This document shows positions 25,567 to 54,330 of a stretch of DNA of 64,000 nucleotides, piece by piece. Source of the stretch: Mizuhopecten yessoensis. Taxonomy: Eukaryota. The stretch's first letter is position 1, and each line of letters opens with the position of its first letter. The stretch is taken from NCBI RefSeq assembly GCF_002113885.1, contig NW_018405547.1, positions 23,826 through 87,825 of the forward strand. Reading direction: 5' to 3'. Below the pieces are notes generated by a model. That model ran no database searches, had not been told where the DNA came from, and worked only from the letters and a program-made list of their open reading frames with translations. Position numbers and translations under genes: made by a program.

Positions 25567-25837
25567 ATGAAGCGCAATAAGACAGTATGGTTCTTGTTCA
25601 TCAGCATCGCGCTATTCATTTGCCGTCCGTCTGACGGTCAGTTTCTTGGTGGTGGCAGTGGTGGGTTCAATACCTTCCCCGGTACTCGAGGCCAGACGCC
25701 TGCATTTCAGGTCAACAGTGCCCTAGTTAACAATTACGACGGAGGGACTGCTAACCAAGTTGGACAGAGAAGATACCAGGAGTTGGTCAAGTACACACCA
25801 TACTATGTTGACGAGGAGAGAACGCCCGGCTTGTCAA
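25567..25837 (+). CDS. Secreted Gly-rich protein, coding exon 1 (signal peptide MKRNKTVWFLFISIALFICRPSDG)
   Basis: Acceptor TTACAG|CC just before the ATG; upstream UTR-exon donor AAG|GTAAGT at 25117; donor A|GTATGA in phase 1. Confidence 0.82.
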
Positions 25838-26236
25838 GTATGACAACTATTTACATACACCAATTCATTTCCTCGTTTGCTATTACTTATTCTACTCAAG
25901 TAACATTCATCAAGTTCTTTTTTGACCATAATCATTGCATTTTATATGAATAATGTTTTCCAACAAAACTAGTATCCCAATTAATTGGTATTTAAAAGTT
26001 TCCTTTCAAAGAAATACCTCCGCTGACCTTTTCCCATGTTGTAACTTGATTCTATACAGCTTTTGATCGTTTGCTATATGCAAAACGTTTTTTTTGTGTG
26101 ATTTTGCAGTCGTCCGATTTCTCTACACATATTGAATCTAAGGTGTTTCAATGTCCCTTTTTAAAGTTTCAAGATTTTATTAAAAAAAAATATGTCGGAA
26201 ACAAATGTTGATTGATATATCCAATCTATATTACAG

Positions 26237-26354
26237 TTGCAACTCTATTGCTGCTTGGCCTACTGTACGGTATAATCAGTATGACGTCGGCAAATCAATC
26301 GGACATGACGGTCACCATGCTCAGTGTTGGTATGGGTGCCTATCTTGGATATGG
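26237..26354 (+). CDS. Secreted Gly-rich protein, coding exon 2 (IATLLLLGLLYGIISMTS...MGAYLGYG)
   Basis: TTACAG| acceptor in phase 1, donor GG|GTACGT in phase 2, both compatible with the neighbouring exons. Confidence 0.78.
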
Positions 26355-26808
26355 GTACGTACACAATATATTACAGCAAACGTCAATTTGTTGTAAAGTA
26401 CTGCTAATAATGCAAAAGGCTTTTACTAATTATTTATCTCCTTTTATTTTCATATTTAAAAAGTTAAAATTCAGATTAGGTCTTTCATTAAGTTTTTTGT
26501 TTTCATTACTAATAAATGAAAATTAAGATTTGAAAAACATGTTGTCTTCAAGCAGTATAAGAGGTATTCAAAACGTTATCTCAGATATTCTTAACAACCC
26601 CTTCATTCATTTGTTGTACAAGGAGCGAATATTTTGAAAATTGAAGACCCTTTTGTTTCATCTCAATCATATATGATGATGACTATTTTGATCCTGACGT
26701 GAGCCTGAGTAAGAATGATATATTCGCAACATATTTCCGGTACATTAAAGAAGACTGAGACATCCATACACCTATTTACCCGTTATAATATTTCGTTTTT
26801 GTTGATAG

Positions 26809-26863
26809 TTTTGGTGGTGGTAGAGGGAGAAGAAGAGGTAGAGGAGGAGGTAGAGGAGGAGGA

Positions 26864-26898
<35 letters not shown>

Positions 26899-27010
26899 AA
26901 TGGGTGGAGGAGGAGGAGGAGGCGGCGGCGGAATGGGTGGTGGAGGAGGAGGAGGCGGCGGAATGGGTGGTGGAGGAGGAGGGGGAGGAGGCGGCGGCGG
27001 CGGCGGATGA
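26809..27010 (+). CDS. Secreted Gly-rich protein, coding exon 3 (FGGGRGRRRGRGGGRG...poly-Gly with GM punctuation, stop)
   Basis: GATAG| acceptor in phase 2; GGN codon run ending in TGA at 27008-27010; AATAAA at 27192. Confidence 0.8.
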
Positions 27011-29359
27011 GGGATATGATAAATCCAGAAGACAGAACTATCATGATAAAGATACCTCTTAGTACTTGTTATCTACTGAAATTACTACCGACACTATTGT
27101 TTGTGCTCAGGAAAGTTTTATAATTTTGTTTCGATTTATTGGAGGAATTGTTCCATATCTTTGCTTGAAGGAATCGGTATAGGAAACTGCTAATAAAATG
27201 TTTAAAATAACATCGTTTTAGTGTTTTTTTCACGGCATTAATTAAGGATTATTTATACTCCATTTCCTTTATGATTTAACGACCAACAACTGTGACAGTT
27301 CTCCATCAGTTGTCTTATCCCGAAATGACATAACACTATTCTTGATACTCTCTTTATTGTTTGTATTTATACTCTATATTGTTTACAACATTTAATATAT
27401 AGTCTCAATGTTGTCTGTGGCATTCCACGACATGTTGTGACTGTCCTATGCAGCCACTAGAACTATTATCGCTATCTTTTGACTTTAATATGCAACACAA
27501 TTGATACTATCATATGCAGACAGGACTTTTGTCTGCCCATGACTTTTCAAAAGGCTAACGTCGTTTTTTACTTAAAACTTTATCAGTTGCAAAATCCATA
27601 ACACAATCATCCTCTTGCATGACCACGCACATATTCATTCAGTTTAAATATTGACTCATGAATCCAATATTTTGAAAATATTTACAAGACACCACAAACG
27701 AGTTAGAATTCGATGTCATCAGCCAAAGGTCAAAATCACTGTAACTGTGACTAGAAAACGAACACGTGCTTGGGATAAAAAAAAATACGGTATAAGCATT
27801 CAGGCCTTAAAATGATATGCTTCAGATTTGTACGGTAGAGATCATTAAATGTAAAATTTACACAATCTTTACCACAGACAGATGGTTAAATACATTACTC
27901 AGATTCAGTTCAGCTGACACCAAGGTAACTATGCGAACCATCCATCACGAGGTGAGACCTACTTTTGACGGTATCATTCGCGCACCCACTCATTATGTTG
28001 GATGGTACGTAAGGCGGTGTCGTACCAACTACATGTATTTGTTACAGAATTCACGTAGGTTTCATAAGCTCTGAGACCGCATCCTAGTCCGATCGTTATT
28101 TTCACATTTCAGCTCATATATCTTCCGGAATCCCGAAATATCAACGAAACTGTTATTCGAACTCAAAATCGATCGGAAAGAATGATAACAAGGAAGCCAT
28201 TTAAAAAATACGATGATAATTAGATCTGGTGTTCCGGAAAGGTAAGCCACTTCTGGTTCATCGATATACCTCCAATGTAAATCTGAGTCACATCCGGGTA
28301 TTGTGTTATACTCAACTTGAATAACAACGAACCGACTAGGTACACTTATGAACGTTATTAAAAACATCTACTTTCATATCGTCAAGGAGATAGAATATAT
28401 ATTTTCCGGTGAAAGCATGGTGGCGACTCTAAAATTTGCCATCCTTTACATCATCCTTTATCTTCAAGGATTTAACGTTTGAATGTGATTTCAAGTTTTT
28501 ATCAGGGGGAATTTGTTATTTATGACGTCAAAAGTATTATGAGCATTCCATACCTGACTTATAAGCTGATAGAAGTCGTTAGGATTTAATGTTTTGTTTT
28601 AAGTAAAATAGCATTTTCATGACAGCACTTTCCCGTGGTAGCGGCAATGTGGCTCACACTGTTCAGTCGATCACAAAGCCACCAATACCAACACAAGTAT
28701 TCTTTCATTCAGTAAAGAACGGGAATTTGAGAGTTTCACCAGGTGATATGCCCTGACCGGAGATTTGATGCTTTGTCAATTCCAAGAATGATGTACCTAA
28801 AAAGTAATATTTTCTCACTGTCTTTTAAAAGCTGAACAAATGATGACAACGTCACAGGAAAAAAGACTGGAACCTTGAACCGCAACAAAGAATTAACGTC
28901 CAGAGGGCAATTTCCCTGAGTTCTGAAAAGAAAGAAATTAAAAAGAAGTGACCTTCCCTCAAGGCGTAGACATGAATATGAATTCACAAATATTGTGAAG
29001 AGAAGTGTTGAGCTGTAACTTAACAAGCATAAATAATTCCTAGAGAGACCTATAACGCACACGCATGAAACAATGACGATATTAATGCAATGCTCTGTTT
29101 TGCTATCGTGAAACAAAAAAGAACCTTGACAGGGAAAGTATTAACTTAATATATTAGTCATGCCTAAATCTAATGCAGACATTCTAAGAGAAATGACAAG
29201 CCTGACCTGTCGACAAGAAACAAACTGCGAAGTATGCCAATTCTACAACAACTGAAGTACAGAAAAACTTCAGAGCTTTCCTAAAAACGAATGACTAAAG
29301 CTATAACTAATGACAGACTGCTTTGAAAATGCGTGCAATGTGTGCTTCACAAACTAAAG

Positions 29360-34681: not shown

Positions 34682-35724
34682 CTATCCGGTATTGTTGATC
34701 AGCATGGGAAGAAGTACTAGAGCTCCCACTACAGGACGAGACATAAAGAAACCGTCACTTAATCACAAAATACGTGTATGCACTGATACACAGTCAAACG
34801 TGATTACATAGACATTCTGTTTGAGAAATTAAAATATTTTAATAATATAAGAATTTGAGAAACATGTTTGAGATATGAAGTATGCATAGCTAGGTTGTAG
34901 TAGAAGATTAGTGCTACTTAAGCCAGAGGGTAGTTATAGACATTTAAGACAATGAATCACGAAATAAACATTGATTCAGCTTTTGTCTGGTGAATTCATC
35001 ATGCTTTGGACAATAAAAAGATATAGACAGATATAGACAAAGCCTTTACATGGTTATGAGTAAGAGTCGATGCTATCTAAACCTTTTACTGTTATTTAAG
35101 ATTTTATAGCATTACGCCTTTTACTGTGTTACACTTACGGAGGAGAGTATCATCGCCACCATCGTATAGTTATTGGCTGCCGCAGCGGCACCAGGAGGGG
35201 CACCAACAGGAACACCATAGGGGATGTACAGTGCTGTGTTTCCTCCGTATCCTTTTCCATATCCGCCACCGTATCCTTTTCCATATCCGCCACCGTATCC
35301 TTTTCCATATCCGCCACCGTATCCTTTTCCATATCCGCCACCGTATCCTTTTCCATATCCGCCACCGTATCCTTTTCCATATCCGCCACCGTATCCTTTT
35401 CCATATCCGCCACCGTATCCTTTTCCATATCCGCCACCGTATCCTTTTCCATATCCGCCACAAACGCCTCCGTACTTTTTTTCCATATCCGCCATATCCG
35501 CCTCCGTACCTCTTTCCATACCCCCCATATCCGCCGTAACCTCCATGGCCGCCATACATTCCCATTTCACCACTGGACATATCATATCCCTCTCCTCCAT
35601 ATTCCCCATATCCACCAATCACATATCCATCATGTCTATATCCTCCCCCATACCCGCCGCCAAGACTGCAACTCAGGGACACCAGAAAGGTTTAGATCGG
35701 CAGAGTAAGTGTACCAAAATGCAT
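34682..35724 (-). pseudogene. Pseudogenised GGYG/GKGY-rich secreted protein (paralog A)
   Basis: ATG at 35724 aligns with the signal peptide of paralogs B/C but has an in-frame TAA at 35692-35694; frameshift at the T7 run 35476-35482; second frameshift near 35165 before GDDTLL; intron 35138-34729; last coding exon 34728-34682 LGALVLLPMLINNTG*. Confidence 0.82.
35245..35460 (-). repeat. 9 x 24-bp perfect repeat encoding GGYGKGYG
   Basis: CCGTATCCTTTTCCATATCCGCCA tandem on the + strand. Confidence 0.95.
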
Positions 35725-36015
35725 GGTGCCTGCGTTAATTTTTTTTATTCAGATGAAGTAAAAACCCATTTTCTACAAATTAGAAGTAAGGAAGCGCCTA
35801 TTCAAATTTCAGTTTGTCGGTACAGAGTATCAAATAAAAAGTTGTTTTGATTTTAAATGCGTTGGTAACCTTCTAAGATGCATCTATTTGTAAGTTTAAA
35901 TCAATTGCATATTGTTGTTGTCAAAGAAAAAACAAAATAAATAAAAAGATAAAAAATGTTAAAACATTAGGAAAGCACTGTTGAAAATCATATACCTTTA
36001 CTTATACTATGCGTA

Positions 36016-36070
36016 ACTTACCTTTTCACCTGATCTGGCTGAATGCGAAGTATACGGGTAGATATATACT
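36016..36070 (-). promoter_or_regulatory. TATA-like box and 5'-UTR exon donor of paralog A
   Basis: Minus-strand TATATA near 36063-36068 and AAG|GTAAGT donor at 36021; same layout as paralogs B/C. Confidence 0.5.
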
Positions 36071-39021: not shown

Positions 39022-39022
39022 T

Positions 39023-39054
<32 letters not shown>
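39022..39054. repeat. (CAT)n microsatellite
   Basis: Direct observation. Confidence 0.95.
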
Positions 39055-39055
<1 letters not shown>

Positions 39056-39494
39056 GCATCCATACACAATCGTGGTCGATTAGTATTACTTGGCGTTCTG
39101 AATGTGTCTTCCTCAACGAGTTGCCTATTAAAGTATGTAAGTGTTACCTGTGTTGGTTTGTGTTCTTTTTGTATTATTTTGTCATATGTTGGACGTCTGG
39201 AATCTATTGGTTGTACGTTTTCCACGATGATAATGTTTGTTGTACCGAGGAGTTGCAGGGGTAACGAGCCCCTATGATACATGATTGAGGTACTGTGTTG
39301 TGTTTCCTAAGTGTAATCGCGTTGACAATCGCTTGTAATGTATCAGGATTTATTTATGTTGCTGCTAATCTGCATTTGGAAAGTATTATGTAGTATGTAT
39401 GTATCTGAAATGCTGAAAAGTGGGTCTGGTTTTTTTTGCTGATACTTAATTATGTTACGTTCTTTCCATATTGTCCATTTGATTGTGATTATTA

Positions 39495-40582
39495 TCCATA
39501 AACTGGATAACTACGGCATCAGAGGAAACCTCCACAACTCGCTCTCCAATTTCCTGAGACAAAGAAATATGAGAGTAGCACTAGAGGGAGAAACATCCAG
39601 AGAAGTAACCGTTGACTCCGGGGTACCACAAGGGACAGTGCTCGGGCCACTACTATTTCTTTGCCATATAAATGACATACCAGAAAGTGTAACCTCTAGC
39701 GCACGTCTGTTCGCCGACGACTGTTTGATATACAGACAAATAAACCAATATAGTGACAACCAACTACTAGAGGACGACCTAAACAACCTGGAAAAATGGG
39801 CTAACTTATGGGGAATGAAATTCAACACCAAAAAATGCTACGTAATAAACATCAAAGAAAAAAGTCACAGATTCTACACCCTAAATGGACATATCTTGGA
39901 ACAAGTGAAAAATAATCCTTACCTTGGGCTAACAATTTCAGACGACCTTAAGTGGAACACCCACATACTAAAAATATCAAGAAGAGCCAGTTCGACGACT
40001 GGCTTTCTCAAAGGAAATCTAAAACATTGCCCATCGTCTTGCAAGAAAACAGCATATATATCCCTAGTACGATACATCCTTGAATACGGCGCCATTATTT
40101 GGGACCCATATACCAAAAACGAAATTGACAAACTGGAGAGAATACAGCGCTTGGCAGCCAGGTTCATTTTAAGTGACTATAACTCAGGGAAAGATGGATG
40201 TATCACAAGGATGCTGGAGAACCTGGAACTACCAACACTCCAGATCAGGCGAGCGTAACAGAGGGTCACATTTATGTATAAGGTGGTTGAGGGGTTGATA
40301 CCAGCTATACCTCCAGCTGATCATCTAACAAAAAACCAGACTAAAAAGGAACATCAAGGCCAGAAACTTCTCGGACTATATATCGAATAATGTGTTAAAA
40401 ACATCAATGATAAACAACTCTAAATCCAACACAGTACCAAAGTTTAGCTGTGATCAATGCAATAACTCGGTTTTTTTGTACGTACTGTCATAGAGTGGAA
40501 CTATCTGGAAGAGGACTTAGTATGTGCCCCTACTTTGGAAGCCTTTAAGAGTGCTATAACACACCATAACTCTAACTGAACT

Positions 40583-40637
<55 letters not shown>

Positions 40638-40685
40638 GTATAAAAACCGGAACCGAAAACTACAACGTAAAGATACAGATACATG
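39495..40685 (+). mobile_element. 5'-truncated CR1/L2-type LINE (RT domains and 3' end)
   Basis: HKLDNYGIRG, SGVPQGTVLGPLLFL, LFADDCLIY, YLGLTIS..LKWNTH, LERIQRLAARF; (CT)n and AGATACAGATAC tail. Confidence 0.92.
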
Positions 40686-41880
40686 ATGTGTTGATAATTT
40701 TACGTAAGTCATCTACAAGTTCTTCTAGTTCTCCTAGCATCTTTTTCTCCTCGTTCAGTGTAATTCTTATCCCTGGTAATTCATCAATCATATGGTGTTG
40801 TGTCAGTTGTATCAGTTCTCTTGTAAAGTCACAATGATAAAATAGGTGGTCTAATGTTTCTGTTTCTCTGCTACACAAATGGCACTTACCATTAAACCTG
40901 TTCATCTGTTGGAGATTTTGTTCTGTGTATATAATTCTGTGTAAGCATTTCCATTGCAACTCTTTCATTTTTAAGGGAATTTCTATATTGTGTACTTGAT
41001 CCCAAATATTGTACCATTCAATTTCCTTTTGAAAATGAATTTCCCATTTTTCTTCTGATTTAAGTTTTACATTTGTTGTCAAGATTCTTTGAACTGTGTT
41101 CTCTTTCAATTGCATGGGTTTTGTTGTGGAAAATGTACCATCTTTTAAATATCCTAAACTTAAATCCTCGTTTAATATATAATATCTTTAGTTTTGTTGG
41201 CTGATTGTGTTTGTTATTTAAGTATTAAGAGAAATCTCTGAGGGATTGCTTTTATTTTATTTTAGTGAATTCAGCTATCCAGTTTTGTTTGTGGGTCAGT
41301 GTATTTAACAATGGATTATTATCTATGAATTTGTTATGTTTACTGTCCCATATTTCCTAAATTTTGTTTATTCAACTTTTTGCACATGACAGTAAAGTAA
41401 GGGGTTTTCTGTTTAATTGTATGTTAATATTGCCCAGTAATTTCTGGTTAAGAATTTGTTGCAGTGTGAGATTCAGCATTTTTACTTGTAGTTTGGCCCA
41501 ACGAATAGACCATTTCTATAAAATTAAGGTATTTTTGTAAGGTCTAGTCCACTAAGGTCTTAACATCTATATAAATAGTTATGCATGTTATATTTGTTGT
41601 CAAACTGTTGTATGTAAAATCTACCTTTACAGTTCCAGCTCTGTGGTGTTGAGTGTATACTTTTATATATTGTTTTAATGTATTTAGTATCTATGAAAGT
41701 TTCTAAGTATACCATCGTCATTTCTCCTGTATTCGTATCATTGCAAACTACTTTCCTCTCTATATGGTTATTTTTGTGTACCTCATATGTAATTCCCGAT
41801 CAGTGTATTAATTTCTTTCATATAATTTAATTGTATTCCCCTGGCTTCTATTTCAAATCGTATTGCTGATAATACTAATG
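40686..41880 (-). mobile_element. L1/Tx1-type LINE ORF2 C-terminal fragment (zf-RVT)
   Basis: KMKELQWKCLHRIIYT...CHLCSRETETLDHLFYHC (CxxC..E..H...C zinc knuckle). Confidence 0.8.
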
Positions 41881-43742
41881 ATCTGTTGCCAGCAACCTAA
41901 AACTCCTTCCGAAGCGGCATGTAGGAAATTGAGACGGAAACTTATGTAAGGTAATATGTTCGATGGTTACTATGGTCGTAACTGAACATCAACATCGTTG
42001 TTGACTGAGTGGTTTGAAACATATGCTTAATCATTTTTAAAGTAAGCAAAGGTTAATTACAGTAAAGCAATATTAAGTTTTGGCAAAAATTGTCAGAAGG
42101 TAACTTTACAATTTAATAAAACATTTTGATGCAGTATGGTCATCGAATATACGAAGGAATTGTATTTTTTAAATTAAAAACAAATCGTTTTGACATCTTT
42201 TGCTTGTGCTGGAATTAAATGTCGTTTATTTCGATTTCATCAAATTCTTCATCAGTTACACAGTTACAGGAAATAAATGCATAATTGCATGATAAGATAG
42301 CTATTGCTATACCAAGGATTTGTTAATGGAGACACTTGAGTTAAGACTTTGGTGGCTGTATTATAAAATAGCAATGAAACACACAGATAGTGGTGCATTT
42401 ATTGTTAGATTGCTTAAATCCAATATTCTTCTAATTTGTAACAATTTCTCTTTTAATTAAAACCAAAACAAATTGTGCCTCGTCATCAAAAAATAGCAAT
42501 GTTTAAAAACCTCAAACTGTTTAATTTATTGATTCTTGATCTATTTAAAGTAATGCAGCCAAAATTGTAGTATACATTATAAGTAAACAATCTGACGAGG
42601 TCGTACATTTATTTCTATTGCGCTATACCCGCGGAATAATACCAAAAGCAATTGAATCACTCTGTGCGGCACCATTGAAACAGCAAGAAATAGACTTAAG
42701 TTTTCCAGAGATACAAGGTTCATTAATCACGAGAGACATTTATCTTAAGTAGAAATTTAAAGGTGTTTAATTCATTATGATGTCATAGCTAGAATTACAT
42801 ACCAGTAGGTGCACCTTAACACAAGTCAACGTGGACTGATTTAATCGCTAGAAATACGAAGCAAGAAAGCAGCTTTTTGAAAATCTAAAACGTCGATTTA
42901 AAAACAACCGAAGGTAACTTGTTACTGCACCATATGTGTTTGTCCATTTCATGAAAGACGCCGAATGACGTGAAATAATTAATAGATCACGAGGTAAGGA
43001 AGCGCCTACTGAATAGGACGTCAATACAGAAAGACATTCACTATGATGACAATGGTCGTCTTATGACTCATCACTGAAACTAAATACTGAACTAAATTCT
43101 AAGTTTGTTTTGAACAAAACTCTATTTTAGAACGGTTTAGAGTCGAGACACCGGTTACTGATTGCTTGACAAAGACAACAGACGGTTTTGAAAGCCCTCA
43201 AACAAGTGTTTAATTACTTTTTTTGTGTCTAAAACGAACTAAGCGTTTATCATTTTTACCAAATTGATTAATTTTATTCCTGATATTACAAGGTTGAAAA
43301 CAATGAAATAAAATGTGTAATATATACGTACGATATGTAGAAATACAAAAAGGAGACGGTGCCTCTAACACCTTTCAAAACTTTTTTTTAATTGACGATT
43401 TGTAAGTTTTAACAGGAAATGTATGACCATATTTCAAGAGAAATATTTGTTTTATCTACATTTAAAATGTATACCTAGGTATACACCTGTTTCACTATCC
43501 CAATACTTGGTATTTATTGCAACTGAAAAGAAAAAATTGGAGTCCGGGTATGGTATTTTCATTCAGGCATAAGGCAAGACTAGTTTATGGTGTCAGCCTA
43601 CCATGTAGATCTACACAGACGTCGTACCAGTTACACAAGGCTTCCAACTTTGATCGATGGACCATTACCTGTTGTTATGCGATGTTGTAATTACATGGGC
43701 ATGTTTCCTGGGTTGATCAGTAAGTTCACCAAAGATAGAGCG

Positions 43743-43804
43743 TATAAATACCGGCCCATTTCTTTTAGATATTTTATCCTCTCCACATCGGCGCATATGA
43801 ACAG
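43743..43804 (+). promoter_or_regulatory. TATA box and non-coding exon 1 of paralog B
   Basis: TATAAATA at 43743-43750, donor ACAG|GTAAGC at 43804; conserved in copy C. Confidence 0.7.
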
Positions 43805-44215
43805 GTAAGCAAGATTTATATGAAAACGTAATGATCTGATGGAACGTTTGTAGCCTAGTCTTTAAGTGACTGGTATTGATTAATATGCTAGTTAGTACAT
43901 AACAAGGGACATGTATTGCTTACATTTTGTTTTTGCTTCTATCGTTATCGACAGAAAGGTGAGTTAAGTATAAATATGTATATTTGAGGAAGTAAGACAA
44001 AATAATGTTGTTTTCTTAATGATTATAATAGTTAAAACTCTGTTCCTTACATCATGCCGGTTTTATCTTTATTTTATGTCTTTTTTTAATATTTGATAAA
44101 TGCATTTGTTTTACAGAGGAATTCATGTTTTTAAAATATTATTACTATCAACATCAAACCAGCATACACATTTTAATAATGCTTGTGAATTTTCAACCTC
44201 AACTTCAGGATCAAC

Positions 44216-44585
44216 ATGAACTATCTTACCTTTGCCCTTTCGACCTTCGCCTTTCTCGTGACCCTTGACTGCTGTCTTGGGAACGGTTATGGTGGCTATG
44301 GTGGATATGGAGGGGGATATGACATGTATGGAGGCTATGGAGGTTACGGCGGATACGGAGGGGGATACGGCGGGTCCGGAGGGGGATATGGCCAGGGATA
44401 TGGAAAAGGATATGGAGGGGGATATGGACAAGGATACGGTGGGGGATATGGACATGGATACGGCGGGAAAGGTTATGGCATGCCCCAACAGGCATTGTAC
44501 ATCCCCTATCCTATGCCAGTAGGTCCCGCTCCAGGTGCTGTCGCGGGAGCCTACGCAGCCGGAGATGACAATTCCCTCCTTCTGT
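44216..44585 (+). CDS. Gly/Tyr-rich secreted structural protein (paralog B), main coding exon
   Basis: CTTCAG| acceptor at 44208; signal peptide MNYLTFALSTFAFLVTLDCCLG; GGYG repeats; donor T|GTGAGT in phase 1. Confidence 0.9.
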
Positions 44586-44732
44586 GTGAGTATTATATCT
44601 AATATTTAAAATCTCCAAAAGTTCATATATTAACATAGGTCGAAAGTATTTGCAAATAAGAAACCATAAATCAATATAATTTGATAAAGTACCTTCAAAT
44701 AATGTTATTTACTTGTATACGATTTCTTTCAG

Positions 44733-44785
44733 TTGGAGGTGCCGCCTTGCTTCTGCTGCTGTTGAGTAACAACAATATTGGATAA
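44733..44785 (+). CDS. Paralog B last coding exon (FGGAALLLLLLSNNNIG*)
   Basis: TTTCAG| acceptor in phase 1, TAA at 44783-44785; 140 aa total; 3'-UTR intron 44815-44956; AATAAA at 45051. Confidence 0.85.
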
Positions 44786-45786
44786 GTCACCACTTAAATC
44801 TCGATCTACAACGGGTATGTATGCTTAGAAATTAGTAATCGTTACAATGCTTCTGGAATAATTTTTACAATTTTTACATTTTACAATTAGATGTTATATC
44901 AAAATCATACCTTTTTAATTACAACGCCATTTTCATTTTGTTGTTTTTTGTTTTAGATTACAGACCTGATTCTCATTTTTGTGCGCAAGACTCCTTGGCT
45001 GTAACCAAAGACCCCTGTGTGTTTCCTGTTTTACCTTATATTGGTTCTTTAATAAAGCATGGTTATTTATAAATTATTCGAGTTATCTGTTACTTCACGA
45101 TTGAATTGCTGATCTTGAAAATTTGGAGATACAATAAGCTCATAGGAACGTTTAAAGCGTAACTTGCAATGTATTTGGTACACACAATTGTTTGACCATT
45201 TTACATGGTATCTGGCTTTATAACAATTCCATACAAGAAGCTAATTAACAAAATAATCAAAAATAACAACAACAACAACAACAAGAAAAAACAACAAAAA
45301 AAACCCCCAAAAAAACACATAATATTAAGTTTATCAGTTTTACTGTCATGATCATTGTTATACCGATAAATATTTGTTGAGTTCAAATTAATCTTATCCG
45401 AGAAAATAAGATAACTATTAATGTGATGTAATAACATTTGTTTCCACCTTGCTGTTATTTCTACAGCAAATCTTGTTATTTACTTTGTCAATTGGTGAAC
45501 ATATAACGACTATTGATAAAGTATAGGTGTCTCATATTGAAGTTAATGTGCACTATCATCAGAAACAATAGTTGAAATATTATTGACAGAGAAGAAATTA
45601 AGAGAACTTCACCAAAGAGTTATCATGAGCTGGTCTGAAATATTGCATTGAAGCCTTATTTTATCCTCTTATGCACTTAATTCGGACAATGCGTGTTAAA
45701 TGTAATTGTGTTTCGATATTTTTAAATAAGCATGTGACAAACCCCTACGACAATAAAGATTGCAAATGAAAATTGATTCCCTACTG

Positions 45787-46465
45787 GACTAACAATTTCA
45801 GACGACCTCAAGTGGAACACCCACATACTAAAACTATCAAGAAAAGACAGCTCGATCCTTTGCTTTCTCAAAAGAAATCTAAAACATTGCCCATCGTCTT
45901 GCAAGAAAACAGCATATATATCCCTAGTACGATACATCCTTGAATACGGCGTTATTATTTGGGACCCATATACCAAAAACGAAAATGACAAACTGGAGAA
46001 AATACAGCGCTTGGCAGCCAGGTTCATTATAAGTGACTATAAATCAAGGGAAGATGGATGTATCACAAGGATGCTGGAGAACCTGGAACTACCAACACTC
46101 CAGGTCAGGCGAGCACATCAGAGGGTCACATTTATGTACAAGGTGGTTGAGGGGTTGATACCAGCTATACCTCCAGCTGATCATCTAACAATATATAAAA
46201 CATGTCGTAGAAACATGAGTGATAAACAGCTCTAAATCCCATACAGTACCAAAGTCAATCTGTGATCAATACAGGAACTCATTATTTGTACGTACAGTCA
46301 TGGAGTGGAACCATCTGGAAGAGGACTTAGTATATGCCCCGGCCCTACTTTGGAGACCTTTAAGAGTGCTATAACGCACCAAAACTCTAACCGATTTGCT
46401 CTCTCTCTGACCCGTTGTATAAAAACTGGGCCCGGGAACTACAACGTAAAGATACAGATACATGA
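45787..46465 (+). mobile_element. Duplicated CR1/L2 LINE 3' fragment
   Basis: Near-identical to 39927-40685. Confidence 0.88.
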
Positions 46466-47660
46466 TGTGTTGATAATTTTACGTAAGTCATCCACAAGTT
46501 CTTCTAGTTCTCCTAGAATCATTTTCTCCTCGTTCAGTGTAATTCTTATCCCTGGTAATTTATCAATTATATGATGTTGTGTCAGCTGTATCAATTCTTT
46601 TGTAAAGTCACAGTGATAAAATAGGTGGTCTAATGTTTCTGTTTCTCTGCTACACAAATGGCACTTACCATTAGACCGGTTAATTTTTGGAGTTTTTTTT
46701 GTTCTGTGTATATAATTCTGTGTAAGCATTTCCATTGCAGCTCTTTCATTTTTAAGGGAATTTCTATATTGTGTACTTGATCCCAAATAATATACCATTC
46801 AAATTCTTTTTGAAAATGAATTTTCCATTTTTCTTCTGATTTAAATTTTGCATTTGGTGTCAAGATTCTTTGGACTGCATGTGTACTCTTTCAATTGCCT
46901 GGGTTTTGTTGTGGAAATGTACCATCTTTTAAATATCCTTAACTTAAATCCTCGTTTAATATAATTAAATTTGTTTTGTTGGCTGATTGTGTTTGTTGTT
47001 TAAGTATTAGGAGAATTCTCTTAGGGATTGCTTTTTTTAATTTAGTGAATTCAGCTATCCAGTTTTTATTGAGAGTCAGTTTATTGAACAATGAATTACT
47101 ACCTATGAATTTGTTATGTGTACTGTCCCATATGTCCTTAATTTTGTGTATTCCACTTTTTGCAAAAGACAGTAAAGTAAGTTCTTTTGTTAAACTGTAC
47201 GTTAATATTGCCTAGTAATTTCTGGTTAAGAATTTGTTGCAGTGTGTGATTTGGCATTTTTACTTGTAGTTTGGCCCAGAAGAATAGGGAATTTCTATAT
47301 AATTAAGGTATTTTTGTAAGGTCTAGTTCACTTAGGTCTTAACATTTACATAAATAGTTATGCATGTTATGTTATATTTGTTGTCAAACTCTTGTATGTA
47401 ATCTAAACCTATACAGTTCTTTGGTGTTGAGTGTGTTTTTTTTAATGCATTTGGTATCTATGAAAGTTTCTAAGTATAACCTTCTCATTCCTCCTGTATT
47501 CGTATCATTGCAAACTACTTTCATCTCTATTTGGTTATTTTTTGTACCCATATGTAATTCCAGATCAGTGTATTAATTTCTTTCATATAATTTAATGGTA
47601 TTCCCCTGGCTTCTACTTCAAATCGTATTACTGACAATACTGATAATAAGCAAAAGTTAA
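46466..47660 (-). mobile_element. Duplicated L1/Tx1 fragment
   Basis: Near-identical to 40686-41880, same zf-RVT motif. Confidence 0.8.
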
Positions 47661-48100
47661 TGACAGTAAAGCAATATTAAGTTTTGGCAAAAAATGTCAG
47701 AAGGTAACTTTACAATATAATAAACATTTTGATGCTGTATGGTCATCGAATATACGAAAGAATTGTATTTTTTTTATTTAAAAACAAATCGTTTTTACAT
47801 CTCTTGCTTGTGCTTGAATGTAATGTCAGTTATTTCGATTTCATCAAATTCTTCATCAGTTACACAATACATGAAAAAAAATCAAGGAAATAAATGCATA
47901 ATTGCACGATAAGATGTTGAAACATGATTTTATATAAGAACGAAATCTAATCCTATAAATGCACCTATAGCTATAAATAGGATTTATAAATGGAAACACC
48001 TGAGTTGAAAGCTTAGATGGCTGTATTATAAAATAGCAATGAAACACTCAGATAGGGGTGCATTTATTGTTAGATTGCTTAAGTCCAATATTCTTCTAAG

Positions 48101-50980
48101 GACCTGTTACAGGAACAAAAGAATTTTGCCCACAAAGCAATTTAACCATTACTGGGTTATATTTGTAGCTCCCTAAGACACGATCCATGAGATATTTCAA
48201 AAAAAATAAAAAGGTCCCCAGGGCCTGTGCTATGAACTATTTAGTGCCGCCTTCCAGAGGTGTACGACAGGGTTCACTTTTTTGTCCAAAAACTATCAAA
48301 ACAATGTTTTACGCTATCAAATAATATTACATTATTTAAAGTAGGATCTGCTGCAAATTATGAACTCAAATATGTAACAAAAAATTGCATAATAAAAAAG
48401 TTATAAAACTCTAAAAATGTTGGTATTTTCATACACTTTTTTGCTACATTAATTATTTTAAGGAAGTAAAACACCAATTGCCGGTTCTTGTACACCAAAA
48501 ATCTTTACATATGTTTTGATGCATTATGTTGAGATACGATAGTGAAAATTTCAGAAAATTTGAGAACCGGTAAATTTGTCATTTAAATGTAAAATTGTAG
48601 CAACGTCTATTTCCAAATAAAATCCAACAACCTTATGACCTATAGTCATGTTTGATCATTTAACAATATGTCGCACCAATTTATCATCGCAACTGATCAA
48701 ATTTTCCTCACTAAGATCTTCTGCTCATGATGAGCCCAACTATAAAGCTAGATGTTGCAAAATAAAAACGTTATGCAGTCTCACACACATAAAAGTTTAG
48801 TATGTTATGTACATTTTTAGTTGTTTCGCTTCTTTACGGAAGTGATAGACATATTTTCGGTTTTTGTACACCAACATACTTTGGATATGTTTTGGCACAT
48901 TATTTTGACCGACGATAGTAGAAATTTCGAAAAAAATGGTATTCGGTAAATGTGTCATCTTAAGGATAATATGTTGTATGACCAATGTCAAAATAAATCG
49001 TCAATAACTACAGGTCAATGCGATTTTGGCTTGTGGTACATATCAGCTGAAGCTGGCACCTGGCTATATCACAGAACATCAGACAGATGGGGGTGATGAT
49101 GAGATATGGGTACCAGCATGCTGATGACCTTCTCCGAGGCTAAAATACAATGTCTGGATAGAGTTTGACCTACACGCATCAGAGGATCCTGTCAAGGCAT
49201 ACTATTGTGTGTGTCCTGCAGGAAAGAGAACATCGGGTATGGGTACTAATGTCGGATCAATACTGTATTATCTAGGATACTATGCACATTAAACAGATGC
49301 TAAACCGCTCCAGCCTTCAGATCGCAAATTCAGAGACTGCATATTATGAATGCATTCAAAAAAGAAACATTATTCAATTATAGCCTTTGGCTGAGGTCGA
49401 TACCTGGATTTATCGACCCGAGGAAAGATATATTAACCGAGGACGCATTCCGAGGTCTTTTTCTCGGGTCGATAAATCCAGGTATTGACCGAAGTTAAAG
49501 GCTTCAATTGTTTTATTATTTTACAAAAGAGTAATGTAACCAATCTGAAAACAAAACAAAAAAATCTTCGGAAGTGGGACGGTGCATTGTTTGGAGACAC
49601 GTCATAATTCTATTTTAAGAAACATCCAGTCCTTCAACAAAAATCATGCGCTCCAAGTCAATATTAGTTTTTATCGGTGGACACTTGATGCACTTCTGGC
49701 CAATTACTTGTGGGGAATAATATGAAAAAATAATAAGACCTAAGATTGAACTGAGAAAGGAGAAATTAAGAAAAAAAATTGAATGATCAATTTTGACTAT
49801 GTGTTGTCAAATTAAAAACAACAACAGTGAATACAACAATCTATGAATTGGAAACTATAACTCTCCTAAAAAGAAACAATGTGATGGGTTAACATCTTCA
49901 ACATATTATACTGGTACACCAAATGTTCTGACAAATTGCCTAACTTTTGCTGTATTCCCCCCTTGAACTACCTAGTTTAGTTAACCAGCCATACTCTACT
50001 ATAAACCATATCATCCACCTTGATAGTATATTGGAATAATTTTGGGTTAATTATGAAATACTTGCATTGACCTGTAGTTATTGACGATTTGTTTTGACAT
50101 TGGTCATACAACGTATTATCCTTAAGATGACACATTTACCGAATACCGATTTTTTCGAAATTTCTACTATGGTCAGTCAACATAATGTGCCAAATAATAT
50201 CAAAGTATGTTGGTGTACAAAACCGGAAATATGTCTATTCACTTCCATAAAGATGCGAAACAACTAAAAATGTACATAACAAACTATACTTTTATGTGTG
50301 TGAGACTGCATGACTTTTTTATTTTTATTTTGCAACATCTAGCTTTATAGTTGGGCTCATCATGAGCAGCAGACCTTATTGATGAAAATTTGATCAGTTG
50401 CGATAATAAATTGGTTCGACATATTGTTAAATGATCAAACATGGCTATAGGTCATAAGGTTGTTGGATTTTATTTGGAAATAGACGTTGCGACAATTTGA
50501 CATTTATATGACAAATTTACCGGTTCTCAAATTTTCTGAAAATTTTACTATCATATCTCAACATAATGCACCAAATAATATTTAAAGATTTTTGGTGTAC
50601 AAGAAACGGAAACTGGTGTTTAATTCCGTAAAACAATTGATGTAGCAAAACAGTGTATGAAAATACCAACATTTTTAGAGTTTAAGATTTTATAACTTTT
50701 TTATTATGCAATTTTTTGTTACATATTTGAGTTCATAATTTGCAGCAGATCCTACTTTAAATAATGTAATATTAGTTGATAGCGTAAAACATTGTTTTGA
50801 TAGTTTTTTGGACAAAAAAGTGAACCCTGTCGTACACCTCTGGAAGGCGGCACTAAATAGTTCATAGCACAGGCCCTTGGGACCTTTTTATTTTTTTTTG
50901 AAATATCTCATGGATCGTGTCTTAGGGAGCTACAAAATAACCCAGTACTGGTTAAATTGCTTTGTGGGCTGTAACAGGTC
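48101..50980. mobile_element. Non-autonomous DNA transposon with ~920-bp terminal inverted repeats and a transposase/SWIM relic
   Basis: 48101-49021 is the reverse complement of ~50064-50980 (ends GACCTGTTACAG/CTGTAACAGGTC); absent at the paralogous site ~42430; internal YQLKLAPGYITEH and YYCVCPAGKRT..SILYYLGY. Confidence 0.88.
49376..49520. repeat. Palindromic short repeat nested in the long-TIR element
   Basis: GGTCGATACCTGGATTTATCGACCCGAG ... CTCGGGTCGATAAATCCAGGTATTGACC inverted arms. Confidence 0.75.
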
Positions 50981-51253
50981 ATTTGTAACAATTTTTTTTT
51001 TTAATTTAAACCAAAGCAAATTGTGCCTCGTCATCAAAAAATAGCAACGTTTATAAAACTCAGACTGTTTAATTAAATGATTCTTGATGTATTTAAAGTA
51101 ATGTGGCCAAAATTGTAGTTTATATTATAAGTAAACAATCTGACGCTGCCGTACATTTATTTATATTGTATCTATCCCCGCGGAATAATACCAAAAGCAA
51201 TTAAATTCACCTGAAAGACACTATTGAAACAGCAAGAAACAGACTTAAGTTTT

Positions 51254-52579
51254 CAGGCGCGTAGCTGCCTATAGGCAGAATAGGCAACTGCCTACACGTC
51301 CAATTTCATAAATCCGCTTTTTTTTTTTACTGGTCCTTGTTTTTGTCGATTACATGTATAATTTTGCTTTTTGACTGTCTTCGGATAAATTTTTTCCCCG
51401 TCCCCGGTCCGTCATTAACGAGCCGTTCCCTTGCCGTCCAGTTTTCTTTTAGAAAGCCTATGTCTGATCGATAATCTTACGAACGCTTGTTTTATATGTA
51501 ACATACGCATATATATCGTATCAGAATCTGACATTGATTAAACTAAAGTTTTTGCAAAGTTTTCAATCTCGTCGTCGGCTTGGTATGTCACCTCCCTACC
51601 CCGACGTTGGTAATTTCGATTTAACTATCAACAAACGAGATAAACTGTCTCTAAAATGGACGGACTGCCACCAGTACAATTTTCCATCAAGGTATATAAA
51701 TATTTCTCCATATACACAGGCAATTGTCTCGTATGTGTGTGTGTATGCGAGTCTCATGTGTGTAGTATTATAAGTATCCTACACACATGAGACTCGCATA
51801 CGAGACGACTGCCTGTGTCCATACAGCCTTATAGGCCTATTGTTGTACTGAGAACAGATATATATAATATATACATTTATATTAGAGGTGTGTCAAAAGT
51901 TATAAATATGTCGCAGGAGAGATACTCGGGGAGGGGTAATTGAATTCCTAGGAAACAATTACAATATGGTATGGTGGGTCAATCTAATTACCGTGTGGAC
52001 GGGGCGAAAGCCCGTGGGAGGGGCGAGAGTTCGTGGGTCGAGGATCACATGGCAGTTAGAAATATATTGCAAGTGCACTCCAAAGTTTAACTAAATGGCC
52101 AGTTTGCTGCCCGGAAAACTCGGCGATTACAATTTGTCTGAACTCTGTCTGACCTCTGAAATCGTTCAGTTAACTTGTATACTGACTTTGGATAACGCTT
52201 AAAACATTTATTCACATAAATCACTGATGTTGCCCATCATAAAGTATGCATATTCGACAAAATGTGTGATATAATAAGGAATAAGATATATTTCCCGATA
52301 TTTTCTAACAAAAAAATGAGCTTTATTTTCATTAATTAAACTATTGCAATTGCCAGCGGAACACGGGAGATTGCTCCTAAGGCCTTCTATTATTCCAAAA
52401 TTTCCTGGGGGACGCCCCCCAGACCCCCACCAACCCCTCCCCTACCCTCCCCCTAACGCGCTTCGCGCTCGGGTGCTGCCTGCGGCAACACATTGTCGTG
52501 GAAAGATCCCCTCCCAATCCCTCCCCCTCTCGCGCTAACATTCTGCCTACATACCATATTCAACCCAGCTACGCCCCTG
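51254..52579. mobile_element. MITE-like element with 14-bp TIRs (hAT-like CAGGGG termini)
   Basis: CAGGCGCGTAGCTG ... CAGCTACGCCCCTG; GTTTT on both flanks; absent from duplication copy 1. Confidence 0.8.
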
Positions 52580-53341
52580 GTTTTCTTATGTCTTATGACG
52601 CGAAATAAGTAATAGATCACGAAGTAAGGAAGCGCCTACTGAATAGGACGTCGATACAGAAGGCAAACATACACTGTGATGACAATGGTTGTCTTATGAC
52701 TCATCACTGAAACTAAATAGTGAACTAAATTCTAAACAAAACTCTATTTTAGAGCGGTTTAGAGTTGAGACACCGGTCACTGTTTGCTTCACAAAGGAAA
52801 CAGATGGTTTTGAAATCCCTCAAAACAAGTGTTCAATTACTATTAGTGTTTAAAACAAACTAAGCCATTATCAAAGTGATGAATTTAATTCCTGATATTA
52901 CAAGGTTGAAAACAACGAAAAACATTGTATAATATTATACGTACGATATGTAGAAATACAAAAGGAGAAGGTGCCTCTGACACCTTTGACGATTTGTAAG
53001 TTTAAACATGAATTGTATAACCATACTTCAAGTGAAATATTGGTTTTATCTACATTTAAAATGCATACCTAGGTATACACCTGTTTCACTATCCCAATAC
53101 TTGGTATTCATTGCAACTGAAATAAAATAAAATTAGAAGTCCAGGTATGGTATTTTCATTCAAATAAGGCAAGACGAGTTGTTGGTGTCAGCCTACCATG
53201 TAGATAGATCTACATGGACGTCGTACCAGTTACACAAGGCTTCCAACTTTGATCGATGGACCATTACCTGTTGTTATGCGATGTTGTAATTACAGGTGCA
53301 TACTTCCCGGGTTGATCAGAAAGGTCACCAAAGATAGAGCG

Positions 53342-53400
53342 TATAAATACCAGCTCGGTTTTCAATATTTCATCCTCTCAACATCGGCGCATATGAACAG
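53342..53400 (+). promoter_or_regulatory. TATA box and non-coding exon 1 of paralog C
   Basis: TATAAATA at 53342-53349, donor ACAG|GTAAGC at 53400. Confidence 0.7.
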
Positions 53401-53772
53401 GTAAGCAAGATTTGAGATGAGTCTTTAAGTGACTGGTATTGATTAATATGCTAGTTAATAACAAGGGACATGTATTGCTTACATTTTGTTTTTGCTTCTA
53501 TCGTTATCGACAGAAAGGTGAGTTAAGTATGCATATTTATATTTGAGGTGGTAAGACAAAATAATGTTATTTTCTTAATGATTATAACAGTTAAAACTCT
53601 GTTCCTTACATCATGCCGGTTTTATGTTTATTTGATTTCATTTTTATTAATTGATAAATGCATTTGTTTACAGAGGAATTCCTGTTTTTAAAATATTATT
53701 ACTATAAACATCAAACCAGCATACACATTTTAATAATGCTTGTAAATTTGCAACCTCAACTTCAGAATCAGC

Positions 53773-54130
53773 ATGAACTATCTAACCTTTGCCTTTTCGA
53801 CCTTCACCTTTCTCGTGACCCTTGGCTGCTGCCTTGGGGACGGTTATGGTGGCTACGGTGGATATGGAGGTGGATATGACATGTATGGAGGCTATGGAGG
53901 TTATGGCGGATACGGAGGGGGATACGGCGGGTCCGGAGGGGGATATGGTCAGGGATATGGAAAAGGATACGGTGGGGGATATGGCCAGGGATATGGACAA
54001 GGATACGGAGGGAAAGGTTATGGCATGTCCCAACAGGCATTGTACATCCCCTATCCTATGCCAGTAGGTCCCGCTCCAGGTGCTGTCGCGGGAGCCTACG
54101 CAGCCGGAGATGACAATTCCCTCCTTCTGT
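53773..54130 (+). CDS. Gly/Tyr-rich secreted structural protein (paralog C), main coding exon
   Basis: TTCAG| acceptor at 53765; signal peptide MNYLTFAFSTFTFLVTLGCCLG; GGYG repeats; phase-1 donor. Confidence 0.9.
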
Positions 54131-54277
54131 GTGAGTATTATATCTAATATTTAAAATCTCCAAAAGTTCATATATTAACATAGGTCGAAAGTATTTGCAA
54201 ATAAGAAACCATAAATCAATATAATTTGATAAAGTACCTTCAAATAATGTTATTTACTTGTATACGATTACTTTCAG

Positions 54278-54330
54278 TTGGAGGCGCCGCCTTGCTTCTG
54301 CTGCTGTTGAGTAACAACAATATTGGATAA
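54278..54330 (+). CDS. Paralog C last coding exon (FGGAALLLLLLSNNNIG*)
   Basis: Phase-1 acceptor, TAA at 54328-54330; 136 aa total; AATAAA at 54623. Confidence 0.85.

What the first reader, a model, noticed from the sequence alone, without database searches (positions are those of the whole stretch)
25567..54330. Cluster of four small secreted Gly-rich genes sharing a signal peptide, a low-complexity block and a poly-Leu hydrophobic block
Seen: within about 29 kb there is one poly-Gly/RG/GM gene and three GGYG/GKGY paralogs. Each has a non-coding first exon, a signal peptide and a Leu-rich helix encoded right after a phase-1 intron (IATLLLLGLLYGII; FGGAALLLLLLS; LGALVLLPMLI). Established: Gly/Tyr-rich secreted proteins (shematrins, prisilkin, byssal and periostracal proteins) build molluscan organic matrices, and Tyr with Lys/His supports DOPA-quinone cross-linking. 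Inference: a lineage-specific biomaterial gene cluster undergoing birth and death; I cannot assign it to a named family.
Basis: partly seen in the sequence, partly recalled or inferred. Interest (0 to 1): 0.75.

Follow-up and report, generated by a model that had tools for sequence, protein, structure and literature searches.

The report
Scallop glycine-tyrosine protein gene cluster
This stretch of Yesso scallop DNA holds two working copies and one dead copy of a small exported glycine/tyrosine-rich protein with a greasy tail on its own exon, from an unnamed family found across bivalves, plus an unrelated, highly expressed neighbour gene; the family's job is still untested.

Summary
Genes 3 (44216) and 4 (53773) are intact paralogs: signal peptide, Gly/Tyr block, Pro-rich YIPYP segment, phase-1 intron, then a 16-codon hydrophobic tail exon. 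Their dN/dS is 0.17. Gene 2 (minus strand, 35724) is a pseudogene with a TAA at codon 11 and two frameshifts. Two more copies lie just beyond the window.

Gene 1 (25567) is real. RNA reads confirm four exons and high expression in one run and none in another. It is RefSeq LOC110449041, single-copy, with an unannotated syntenic ortholog in Pecten maximus. No test shows it to be a paralog of the Gly/Tyr genes. It looks like a type I membrane protein with an Arg/Gly tail.

The Gly/Tyr family is not lineage-specific. Relatives with the same phase-1 intron and tail (12-15 hydrophobic residues, N-rich, always ending in Gly) occur in other scallops, an oyster, Mercenaria and Mya. The genome holds at least 27 matches in five or more clusters.

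No named family fits; abductin and KRMP features are not met, and shematrin's remembered end motif is absent. I read the tail as a membrane tether (GPI-like signal or short anchor), but this is untested. Expression of genes 3 and 4 was not tested.

The scan already flagged this family on other DNA of this genome (s1-565284, s1-517131) and this stretch (s1-510981).

The parts
25088..25117 (+). Gene 1 (LOC110449041), exon 1, non-coding. Transcripts begin near 25096 and the donor GT is at 25118.
   Evidence: joint 25117|25559 in 64 X17 reads and molecule starts at 25096/25097. Another 1613 reads carry a diverged version of this exon as a loose end, probably the other allele.
25559..25837 (+). Gene 1, exon 2. 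The ATG is at 25567. It encodes the signal peptide MKRNKTVWFLFISIALFICRPSDG and a 65-aa ectodomain, and ends in phase 1.
   Evidence: depth of about 780-1080 per orientation in X17 and 0 in X22; joint 25837|26237 in 1093 reads; 47% identity to the Pecten ortholog over 61 aa.
26237..26354 (+). Gene 1, exon 3. Hydrophobic, transmembrane-like segment IATLLLLGLLYGIISMTSA plus a juxtamembrane stretch; ends in phase 2.
   Evidence: joint and loose end; 84% identical in Pecten maximus; unique in the genome.
26809..27215 (+). Gene 1, exon 4. Arg/Gly then poly-Gly with three Met; stop TGA at 27008-27010; 3' UTR with AATAAA near 27193.
   Evidence: the loose end at 26354 reads TTTTGGTGGTGGTAGAGGGAGA, which matches 26809 onward. 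Reads inside 26806-27016 were skipped as repeat, so the exact C-terminus rests on the assembly; translation.
35139..35729 (-). Gene 2, main exon, a pseudogene. ATG at 35724. TAA at 35694-35692, +1 in the A7 run at 35482-35476, extra 5 bases near 35170-35166. It carries nine perfect 24-bp GYGKGYGG repeats at 35245-35461.
   Evidence: tblastn pieces in three frames, '*' in the signal peptide. DNA alignment with the intact Pecten ortholog.
34682..34728 (-). Gene 2, tail exon: (L)GALVLLPMLINNTG-stop.
   Evidence: It matches the Pecten P0002 tail GALVLLPLLFNTSG.
43743..43804 (+). Gene 3, TATAAATA box (43743-43750) and predicted first exon ending ...GGCGCATATGAACAG|GTAAGC.
   Evidence: this block is conserved in genes 3, 4 and the more distant gene 5, while the intron behind it is not. 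There is no RNA evidence.
44209..44585 (+). Gene 3, main exon. ATG at 44216, 123 codons plus 1 base. Signal peptide, Gly/Tyr block, ALYIPYPMPVGPAPGAVAGAYAAGDDNSLLL.
   Evidence: 48-70% identity to scallop RefSeq proteins; dN/dS 0.17 against gene 4.
44733..44785 (+). Gene 3, tail exon: (F)GGAALLLLLLSNNNIG-TAA.
   Evidence: 94% identical to the Ylistrum tail exon.
53342..53400 (+). Gene 4, TATA box and predicted first exon.
53766..54130 (+). Gene 4, main exon. ATG at 53773, 119 codons plus 1 base.
54278..54330 (+). Gene 4, tail exon, encoding the same peptide as gene 3.
39902..55185 (.). Tandem duplication that made genes 3 and 4. Unit 39902-45786 matches 45763-55185; the second unit is enlarged by insertions. 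Each unit begins with a reverse-transcriptase fragment.
   Evidence: self-BLAST blocks at 85-94% identity. RVT_1 and zf-RVT domains.

Best explanation
The interval holds part of a tandem array. The genes belong to an unnamed, bivalve-wide family of small (about 135-160 aa) exported low-complexity proteins.

Each family gene has a short 5' exon and a main exon. The main exon encodes a signal peptide, a Gly/Tyr(/Ser) repeat block and a Pro-rich [AS]xY[IV]P[YV]P segment that ends in small or acidic residues. A phase-1 intron follows, and then a tiny last exon encoding 12-15 hydrophobic residues (often LLPLLF), an Asn-rich stretch and a final Gly.

I take the protein to enter the secretory pathway through its signal peptide. 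The Gly/Tyr block would lie outside the cell as a cross-linkable, disordered domain. The tail exon would act as a membrane-association signal, either a GPI-attachment-like signal or a marginal C-terminal anchor. It would hold the aggregation-prone protein on the membrane of the secreting epithelium until or while it is built into an extracellular layer.

The array grows and decays by unequal crossing-over and repeat slippage.

Gene 1 is a separate, conserved neighbour (LOC110449041). It is probably a type I membrane protein with a small ectodomain, one conserved transmembrane segment and an Arg/Gly-rich cytoplasmic tail.

Shown here: gene structures, family membership, conservation, the pseudogene, and expression of gene 1.
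Inferred: export, topology, tail function and any material role.
For: - Intact frames and a conserved phase-1 donor in genes 3 and 4 and in seven paralogs elsewhere in the genome.
- Purifying selection since the duplication: 11 synonymous against 6 non-synonymous changes, dN/dS 0.17.
- Promoter and first-exon footprint shared by genes 3, 4 and 5.
- Relatives with the same architecture in Ylistrum, Pecten, Argopecten, Saccostrea, Mercenaria and Mya. The phase-1 intron sits directly before the tail in every locus examined.
- All 11 distinct tails end in Gly.
- Tail cores are 12-15 residues long. Unweighted Hessa-scale sums are +1.9 to +3.4, which is marginal for a membrane span. Small-residue triplets lie 4-12 residues upstream, and 4-19 polar residues trail behind.
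- At least 27 matches in five or more clusters in this genome.
- Gene 1: RNA joints and depth; RefSeq XP_021351289.1; a Pecten ortholog in the same convergent arrangement with the gene 2 ortholog; single copy.
- Precedent for shell matrix proteins made with a C-terminal transmembrane domain: EGFZP (PMC9290575).
Against: - Expression of genes 3 and 4 was not tested. My one read-laying run went to gene 1, and the run index found no run on record as RNA that holds gene 3. There were only 15-19% word shares in runs guessed to be RNA.
- Genes 3-6 have no protein in the databases searched.
- No GPI or transmembrane predictor was available. Small triplets are expected by chance in Gly/Ala/Ser-rich sequence.
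- The invariant final Gly, and the near-identical last 14 residues in Mercenaria and Mya (QDQIIL[LV]NSTLEG), are hard to explain if the tail is simply cut off by GPI transamidase.
- Tissue of expression is unknown because run labels are coded. No proteome evidence was found.
Confidence: 0.6

Rival explanations
1. These are freely secreted matrix proteins of shell, periostracum, ligament or byssus. The Leu-rich block stays in the mature protein as a hydrophobic assembly element. The conserved last Gly might serve as an amidation donor.
For: - Composition resembles Gly/Tyr-rich cross-linked mollusc matrix proteins such as KRMP and shematrin (PMC3191542).
- The invariant terminal Gly and frequent N-x-S/T sequons in the tail suggest a tail that is kept and exposed to the lumen.
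- Earlier follow-ups of sister clusters reported bulk expression in one RNA sample (unchecked by me).
Against: - A 12-15-residue Leu-rich C-terminal stretch behind a signal peptide is the classic layout of a membrane-association or GPI signal, and would be unusual in a soluble secreted protein (inference).
- No proteome hit or tissue data.
Confidence: 0.27
2. They are Gly/Tyr-rich defence peptides: small, exported, fast-duplicating effectors like the YGGYG-rich antimicrobial peptides of nematodes and arthropods.
For: Small size, signal peptide, tandem birth-and-death cluster, repeat-length variation, and a C-terminal Gly, which is a common amidation signal in such peptides (my own knowledge).
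Against: - The conserved hydrophobic tail exon and Pro-rich segment across several bivalve orders (my estimate: hundreds of millions of years) do not fit fast-evolving effectors.
- There are no dibasic processing sites.
- dN/dS of 0.17 shows no positive selection.
Confidence: 0.06
3. Genes 3 and 4 are silent or decaying copies. Only relatives elsewhere in the genome are used, so this cluster has no current function.
For: - No database protein for them.
- No RNA holder on record.
- Gene 2 next door is dead.
- Gene 6 has no recognisable tail exon within 4 kb.
Against: - Open frames, intact splice sites and a TATA box.
- dN/dS of 0.17, with 11 synonymous changes accumulated since the duplication.
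- Conserved promoter block.
Confidence: 0.07

Closest known systems
Unnamed bivalve Gly/Tyr tail-exon proteins. RefSeq gives them generic names: XP_033732283.1 'keratin-associated protein 21-1-like' (Pecten), XP_060064266.1 'pupal cuticle protein 36-like' (Ylistrum), XP_021362355.1 'glycine-rich protein-like' (Mizuhopecten), XP_062616168.1 'shematrin-like protein 2' (Saccostrea), XP_045208457.2 'sulfur globule protein CV1-like' (Mercenaria).
   Same: Signal peptide, Gly/Tyr block, Y[IV]P[YV]P segment, phase-1 intron and a hydrophobic N-rich tail ending in Gly. Genes 3 and 4 are members. Gene 2 is the broken ortholog of the Pecten protein.
   Different: Genes 3-5 have lost the central Pro of the tail (GGAALLLLLL instead of LLPLLF). 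The names are compositional guesses. No paper describes the family.
Shematrins and KRMPs of pearl oysters
   Same: Signal peptide plus a Gly/Tyr-rich region thought to be quinone-tanned; multi-copy families expressed in the mantle (PMC3191542).
   Different: There is no Lys-rich basic domain as in KRMP. The C-terminus is hydrophobic plus N-rich plus Gly, not the basic RKKKY-type end I recall for shematrins (from memory, Yano et al. 2006). Homology to Pinctada sequences was not tested.
Abductin (scallop hinge rubber)
   Same: A small scallop protein with a signal peptide and very high Gly. Gene 1's last exon has Gly runs broken by Met.
   Different: Abductin is defined by GGFGGMGGGX decapeptides (PMC9999432; PMC13052691). 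Neither gene 1 nor the Gly/Tyr genes have them. The Pecten ortholog of gene 1 has (GGGGR)n instead. True abductin-like genes sit on another contig, C5420, and show no such tail exon.
Membrane-tethered biomineralisation proteins: mollusc EGFZP (transmembrane domain); sea-urchin MSP130 (GPI) and P16 (transmembrane domain), the last two from my own knowledge
   Same: Signal peptide, an extracellular and often low-complexity domain, and a C-terminal membrane anchor; such proteins are nevertheless found in skeletal matrix (EGFZP: PMC9290575).
   Different: No sequence relationship. Anchoring of the scallop proteins is inferred, not shown.

Membership tests
Bivalve Gly/Tyr tail-exon family (unnamed; this scan's s1-565284) | N-terminal signal peptide followed by a Gly/Tyr(/Ser) repeat block | tested here: met
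   Genes 3 and 4 meet it. Gene 2 has it, but with a TAA inside the signal peptide. Gene 1 has a signal peptide but no Gly/Tyr block.
Bivalve Gly/Tyr tail-exon family (unnamed; this scan's s1-565284) | Pro-rich [AS]xY[IV]P[YV]P segment before the exon end | tested here: met
   ALYIPYP is present in genes 2-5, and the columns are invariant in alignment A1. Gene 1 has only KYTPYYV, with hhalign probability 3%.
Bivalve Gly/Tyr tail-exon family (unnamed; this scan's s1-565284) | Phase-1 intron, then a last exon with a 12-15 aa hydrophobic core, an N-rich stretch and a terminal Gly | tested here: met
   Genes 2, 3, 4 and 5. The same is seen in Pecten, Ylistrum, Saccostrea, Mercenaria and Mya. Gene 1 does not meet it: its hydrophobic exon is internal and two thirds of a Gly/Arg exon follow. 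No tail exon was found for gene 6.
Shematrin | Basic C-terminal motif (RKKKY, RRKKY or RRRKY); recalled from Yano et al. 2006, not re-read here | tested here: not met
   The C-termini are ...LLLLLLSNNNIG and ...LLPMLINNTG.
Shematrin | Sequence homology to Pinctada shematrins | not tested
   No Pinctada shematrin came back from any search. The only 'shematrin-like' hit is an automatic name for a Saccostrea protein.
KRMP | Lys-rich basic region before the Gly/Tyr region (PMC3191542) | tested here: not met
   No Lys-rich domain; Lys occurs only inside GKGY repeats.
Abductin | Repeated GGFGGMGGGX decapeptide (PMC9999432, PMC13052691) | tested here: not met
   The back-translated motif matches only contigs C5420, C36741 and C62540, not this contig. 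Gene 1's exon 4 has no such repeat.
GPI-anchored proteins | N-terminal signal peptide plus a C-terminal hydrophobic stretch of about 12-20 aa close to the end | tested here: met
   Cores are 12-15 aa long and are followed by 4-8 polar residues in scallops and the oyster, but by 18-19 in Mercenaria and Mya.
GPI-anchored proteins | Omega site: small residues at omega and omega+2, with a polar spacer before the hydrophobic core | tested here: inconclusive
   Candidate triplets (AGA, NAG, GTG, GGS...) lie 4-12 residues upstream in all seven full-length relatives. Such triplets are expected by composition. No dedicated predictor was available.
GPI-anchored proteins | Release by PI-PLC, or a lipid anchor shown chemically | not testable with these tools
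   Needs a bench experiment.

The most novel reading that the evidence does not exclude
The separately encoded tail is a lipid-anchor or membrane-tether signal conserved across bivalves. That would make this a family of surface-tethered Gly/Tyr proteins that either tie the secreting epithelium to periostracum, shell or ligament, or hand cross-linkable material to it. This resembles GPI cell-wall proteins of yeast and MSP130 of sea urchins. Such a delivery mechanism has not been described for mollusc hard parts. The acidic di-leucine-like DQIILL in the Mercenaria tail (DQIILV in Mya) would then be a cytoplasmic sorting signal in the heterodont versions.
Probability: 0.3. Interest if true: 0.7.

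Novelty: new variant of a known kind. Interest (0 to 1): 0.45.

Why it matters
Gly/Tyr-rich exported proteins are a recurring building material of mollusc shells. They have mostly been treated as lineage-specific, fast-evolving repeats that cannot be compared between species.

This family has anchors that can be compared: a fixed intron phase, a Pro-rich motif and a tail exon with an invariant last residue. These features link scallops, an oyster and two heterodont clams, and give a handle for tracing such genes across bivalves.

If the tail proves to be a membrane tether, it would point to a step between secretion and incorporation that current models of shell and periostracum formation lack.

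The cluster is also a clean small example of birth and death. It shows a recent duplication under purifying selection, a repeat expansion, and a dead copy whose ortholog is intact in a sister genus.

Tried and rejected
- Pfam found nothing for any exon, nor for P0003 or P0006.
- The ESM Atlas gave only sub-threshold 'hypothetical protein' rows for P0002.
- A word search with the gene 1 open frame found nothing. The full HMMER search of 1.84 billion representatives found only its own RefSeq model. I first read this as an orphan gene, then rejected that when tblastn found an unannotated ortholog beside P0002 in Pecten.
- Gene 1 as a diverged family member: hhalign gives only 12 columns at probability 3%.
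- Abductin link: rejected.
- AlphaFold2 of the gene 1 ectodomain with a two-row alignment gave pLDDT 48.5, which is uninformative, so I ran no fold search.
- Runs X11 and X14, chosen as possible RNA holders of gene 3, turned out to be DNA, with even 10-13x depth over introns. They say nothing about expression.
- Literature searches by motif strings, accession numbers and 'shematrin-like protein 2' gave nothing relevant.
- The tail exon of gene 6 was not found within 4 kb.
- I never joined exons into a spliced protein for any tool. Exons were searched by reference, and full-length comparisons used proteins that the tools returned. Runs of N in the abductin-like loci were left as they are.


Full report
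**Organism and setting**

The window is contig C2220:23826-87825 of a 988-Mb assembly. Proteins encoded here carry RefSeq names of Mizuhopecten yessoensis.

**Gene 1 (25.1-27.2 kb, + strand)**

- In RNA run X17 the gene is heavily covered, at about 780-1080 reads deep per orientation over exon 2. That comes to 5178 reads from a fifth of the run. In the poly-A run X22 it is absent.
- Joints 25117|25559 and 25837|26237 are canonical GT..AG. A 134-read loose end at 26354 continues with the first letters of 26809.
- The gene therefore has a short non-coding exon with starts near 25096.
  - Exon 2 holds the ATG at 25567, a signal peptide and a 65-aa domain, and ends in phase 1.
  - Exon 4 reads FGGGRGRRRGRGGGR followed by Gly runs with three Met and a TGA at 27008.
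- Reads inside the repeat at 26806-27016 were skipped by the tool, so the exact end rests on the assembly.
- The gene is RefSeq XP_021351289.1 / LOC110449041, 'uncharacterized'. That model has a wrong upstream start and a different 3' end.
- It is single-copy, has no Pfam domain, and has no annotated relative among 1.84 billion representative proteins.
- It is not an orphan. Eight kb from the Pecten maximus gene for P0002, and convergent with it as gene 1 is with gene 2 here, lie unannotated exons.
  - The ectodomain exon is 47% identical.
  - The hydrophobic exon is 84% identical, with the same donor.
  - The (GGGGR)n last exon follows the same kind of acceptor.
- The hydrophobic segment is followed by about 100 residues that include an Arg cluster. 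I therefore read the protein as a type I membrane protein with a cytoplasmic Arg/Gly tail. This is inference from the positive-inside rule.
- A profile comparison with the Gly/Tyr family aligns only QExxxYxPYxV, at probability 3%. Common descent is not shown.

**Genes 3 and 4**

- Both have open frames from ATG (44216; 53773) to a T|GTGAGT donor. After a 147-bp intron comes a last exon reading (F)GGAALLLLLLSNNNIG-TAA.
- They sit in a tandem duplication, 39902-45786 against 45763-55185, at 85-94% identity. Each unit starts with a reverse-transcriptase fragment.
- The coding sequences differ by 11 synonymous and 6 non-synonymous changes plus one 12-bp repeat indel, giving dN/dS 0.17. The intron is 99% identical, which suggests later gene conversion.
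- Upstream, a TATAAATA box and a block ending GGCGCATATGAACAG|GTAAGC are conserved in genes 3 and 4 and in the more distant gene 5, while the following intron is not.
  - If that exon is spliced to the conserved acceptor 7 bases before the main ATG, its own ATG is in frame (MNRINMNY...). In that case the exon may not be wholly non-coding.
  - No RNA evidence was obtained for these two genes.
- The run index listed no run on record as RNA that holds gene 3. It found only 15-19% word shares in small runs guessed to be RNA. The two best holders proved to be DNA.

**Gene 2 (minus strand)**

- Gene 2 is the ortholog of Pecten P0002, judged by its tail (GALVLLPMLINNTG against GALVLLPLLFNTSG) and by synteny.
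- It is broken in three places:
  - TAA at codon 11 inside the signal peptide, where Pecten has TTG;
  - a +1 shift in an A7 run;
  - a 5-base insertion before the exon end.
- It also carries nine perfect 24-bp repeats.
- Three independent lesions make an assembly error unlikely, but I could not lay DNA reads on it.

**The family**

- The array continues beyond the window with gene 5 (contig position 88409) and gene 6 (99685). I found no tail exon for gene 6.
- The genome has at least 27 matches in five or more clusters. In all seven paralogs examined in detail, the main exon ends ...LL + T|GTAAGT. A tail exon was found downstream in six of the nine loci scanned, not in L005, and L012's held DNA ends too soon.
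- A profile of seven members found relatives in Argopecten, Ylistrum, Saccostrea, Mercenaria and Mya.
- I fetched their loci. Mercenaria, Mya, Pecten and Ylistrum all have the phase-1 intron directly before the tail.
- The Saccostrea RefSeq model reads into the intron. A proper tail exon (LLFLIPLLFNNNNTTG) lies 190 bp downstream.
- All 11 distinct tails end in Gly. Most have LLPLLF-like cores of 12-15 residues, followed by Asn-rich residues.
- The last 14 residues of the Mercenaria and Mya proteins are nearly identical (QDQIIL[LV]NSTLEG).
- The family is therefore old and constrained, not lineage-specific. RefSeq names it five different ways by composition. I found no paper on it.

**What the tail may do**

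- A signal peptide plus a short, marginally hydrophobic C-terminal stretch, preceded by small residues, is the layout of a GPI-attachment signal or a weak anchor.
- The crude hydrophobicity sums (+1.9 to +3.4 over 19 residues) and the candidate omega triplets fit that reading. The triplets are expected by composition, however, and no predictor was available.
- The invariant last Gly and the conserved heterodont tail argue that the tail is more than a disposable signal.
  - The Mercenaria tail contains DQIILL, which fits the acidic di-leucine sorting pattern [DE]xxxL[LI] (my own knowledge).
  - That would favour a true membrane span with a cytoplasmic tail in those species.
- Precedents for membrane-tethered matrix proteins exist: EGFZP, and MSP130 and P16 from my own knowledge.

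**Comparison with named families**

- KRMP: no Lys-rich domain.
- Shematrin: the remembered basic C-terminal motif is absent; homology was not tested.
- Abductin: the GGFGGMGGGX motif occurs only on other contigs, in a separate cluster without this tail.

- The scan had already noted the same family on two other pieces of this genome (s1-565284, s1-517131) and the duplication on this stretch (s1-510981).
Exons were searched by reference.

Noticed in passing
window 29360-33209: A 3.8-kb satellite between gene 1 and gene 2. The unit is 57 bp (about 68 copies), with a 171-bp higher-order period at about 78% identity. It creates long spurious open frames on the + strand.
   Followed up: no
window 24000-25000: A multi-copy element just upstream of gene 1. 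DNA-run word depth rises from about 13 to as much as 1870. It is transcribed in run X22 but not in X17, the opposite pattern to gene 1.
   Followed up: no
window 25088-25117 and 27030-27140: In run X17 most gene 1 transcripts carry a clearly diverged first exon (1613 loose ends) and a 3' UTR with 5 changes in about 110 bases. Exon 2 has three near-fixed differences: 25619 T>A changes Ile to Asn in the signal peptide, and 25629 and 25740 are silent. This looks like a strongly diverged allele, and it lowers the apparent depth.
   Followed up: partly
window 39452-41115 and 45722-46800: Reverse-transcriptase fragments (RVT_1 and zf-RVT) sit at the head of each duplication unit, so the retroelement predates the duplication that made genes 3 and 4.
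   Followed up: partly
window 48128-49021 and 50064-50969: A 0.9-kb inverted repeat at 93% identity, inside the extra DNA of the second duplication unit.
   Followed up: no
window 58126-59478 and 59759-60440: Two 21-bp satellites (64 and 33 copies) with strong strand skew (GC skew -0.52).
   Followed up: no
G000 contig C5420, about 16.3, 37.5, 50.1 and 73.3 kb (L021-L028): A cluster of abductin-like genes with GGFGGMGGG repeats. The open frames end ...GFGGKG|GTATAT, and assembly gaps (N) lie inside some copies. My crude scan found no Gly/Tyr-family tail exon.
   Followed up: partly
L015 (Ylistrum balloti) 5703-15293; L017 and L018: Ylistrum has three gene-3-type copies at 4.5-kb spacing. The Mercenaria and Mya relatives share a nearly identical 14-residue C-terminus that contains a di-leucine-like DQIIL[LV].
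   Followed up: partly
L016 6001-6612 (Saccostrea cucullata): RefSeq XP_062616168.1 'shematrin-like protein 2' appears mis-modelled. It reads through the phase-1 donor (GLL|GTATGC) into the intron and misses the tail exon at about 6565.
   Followed up: partly
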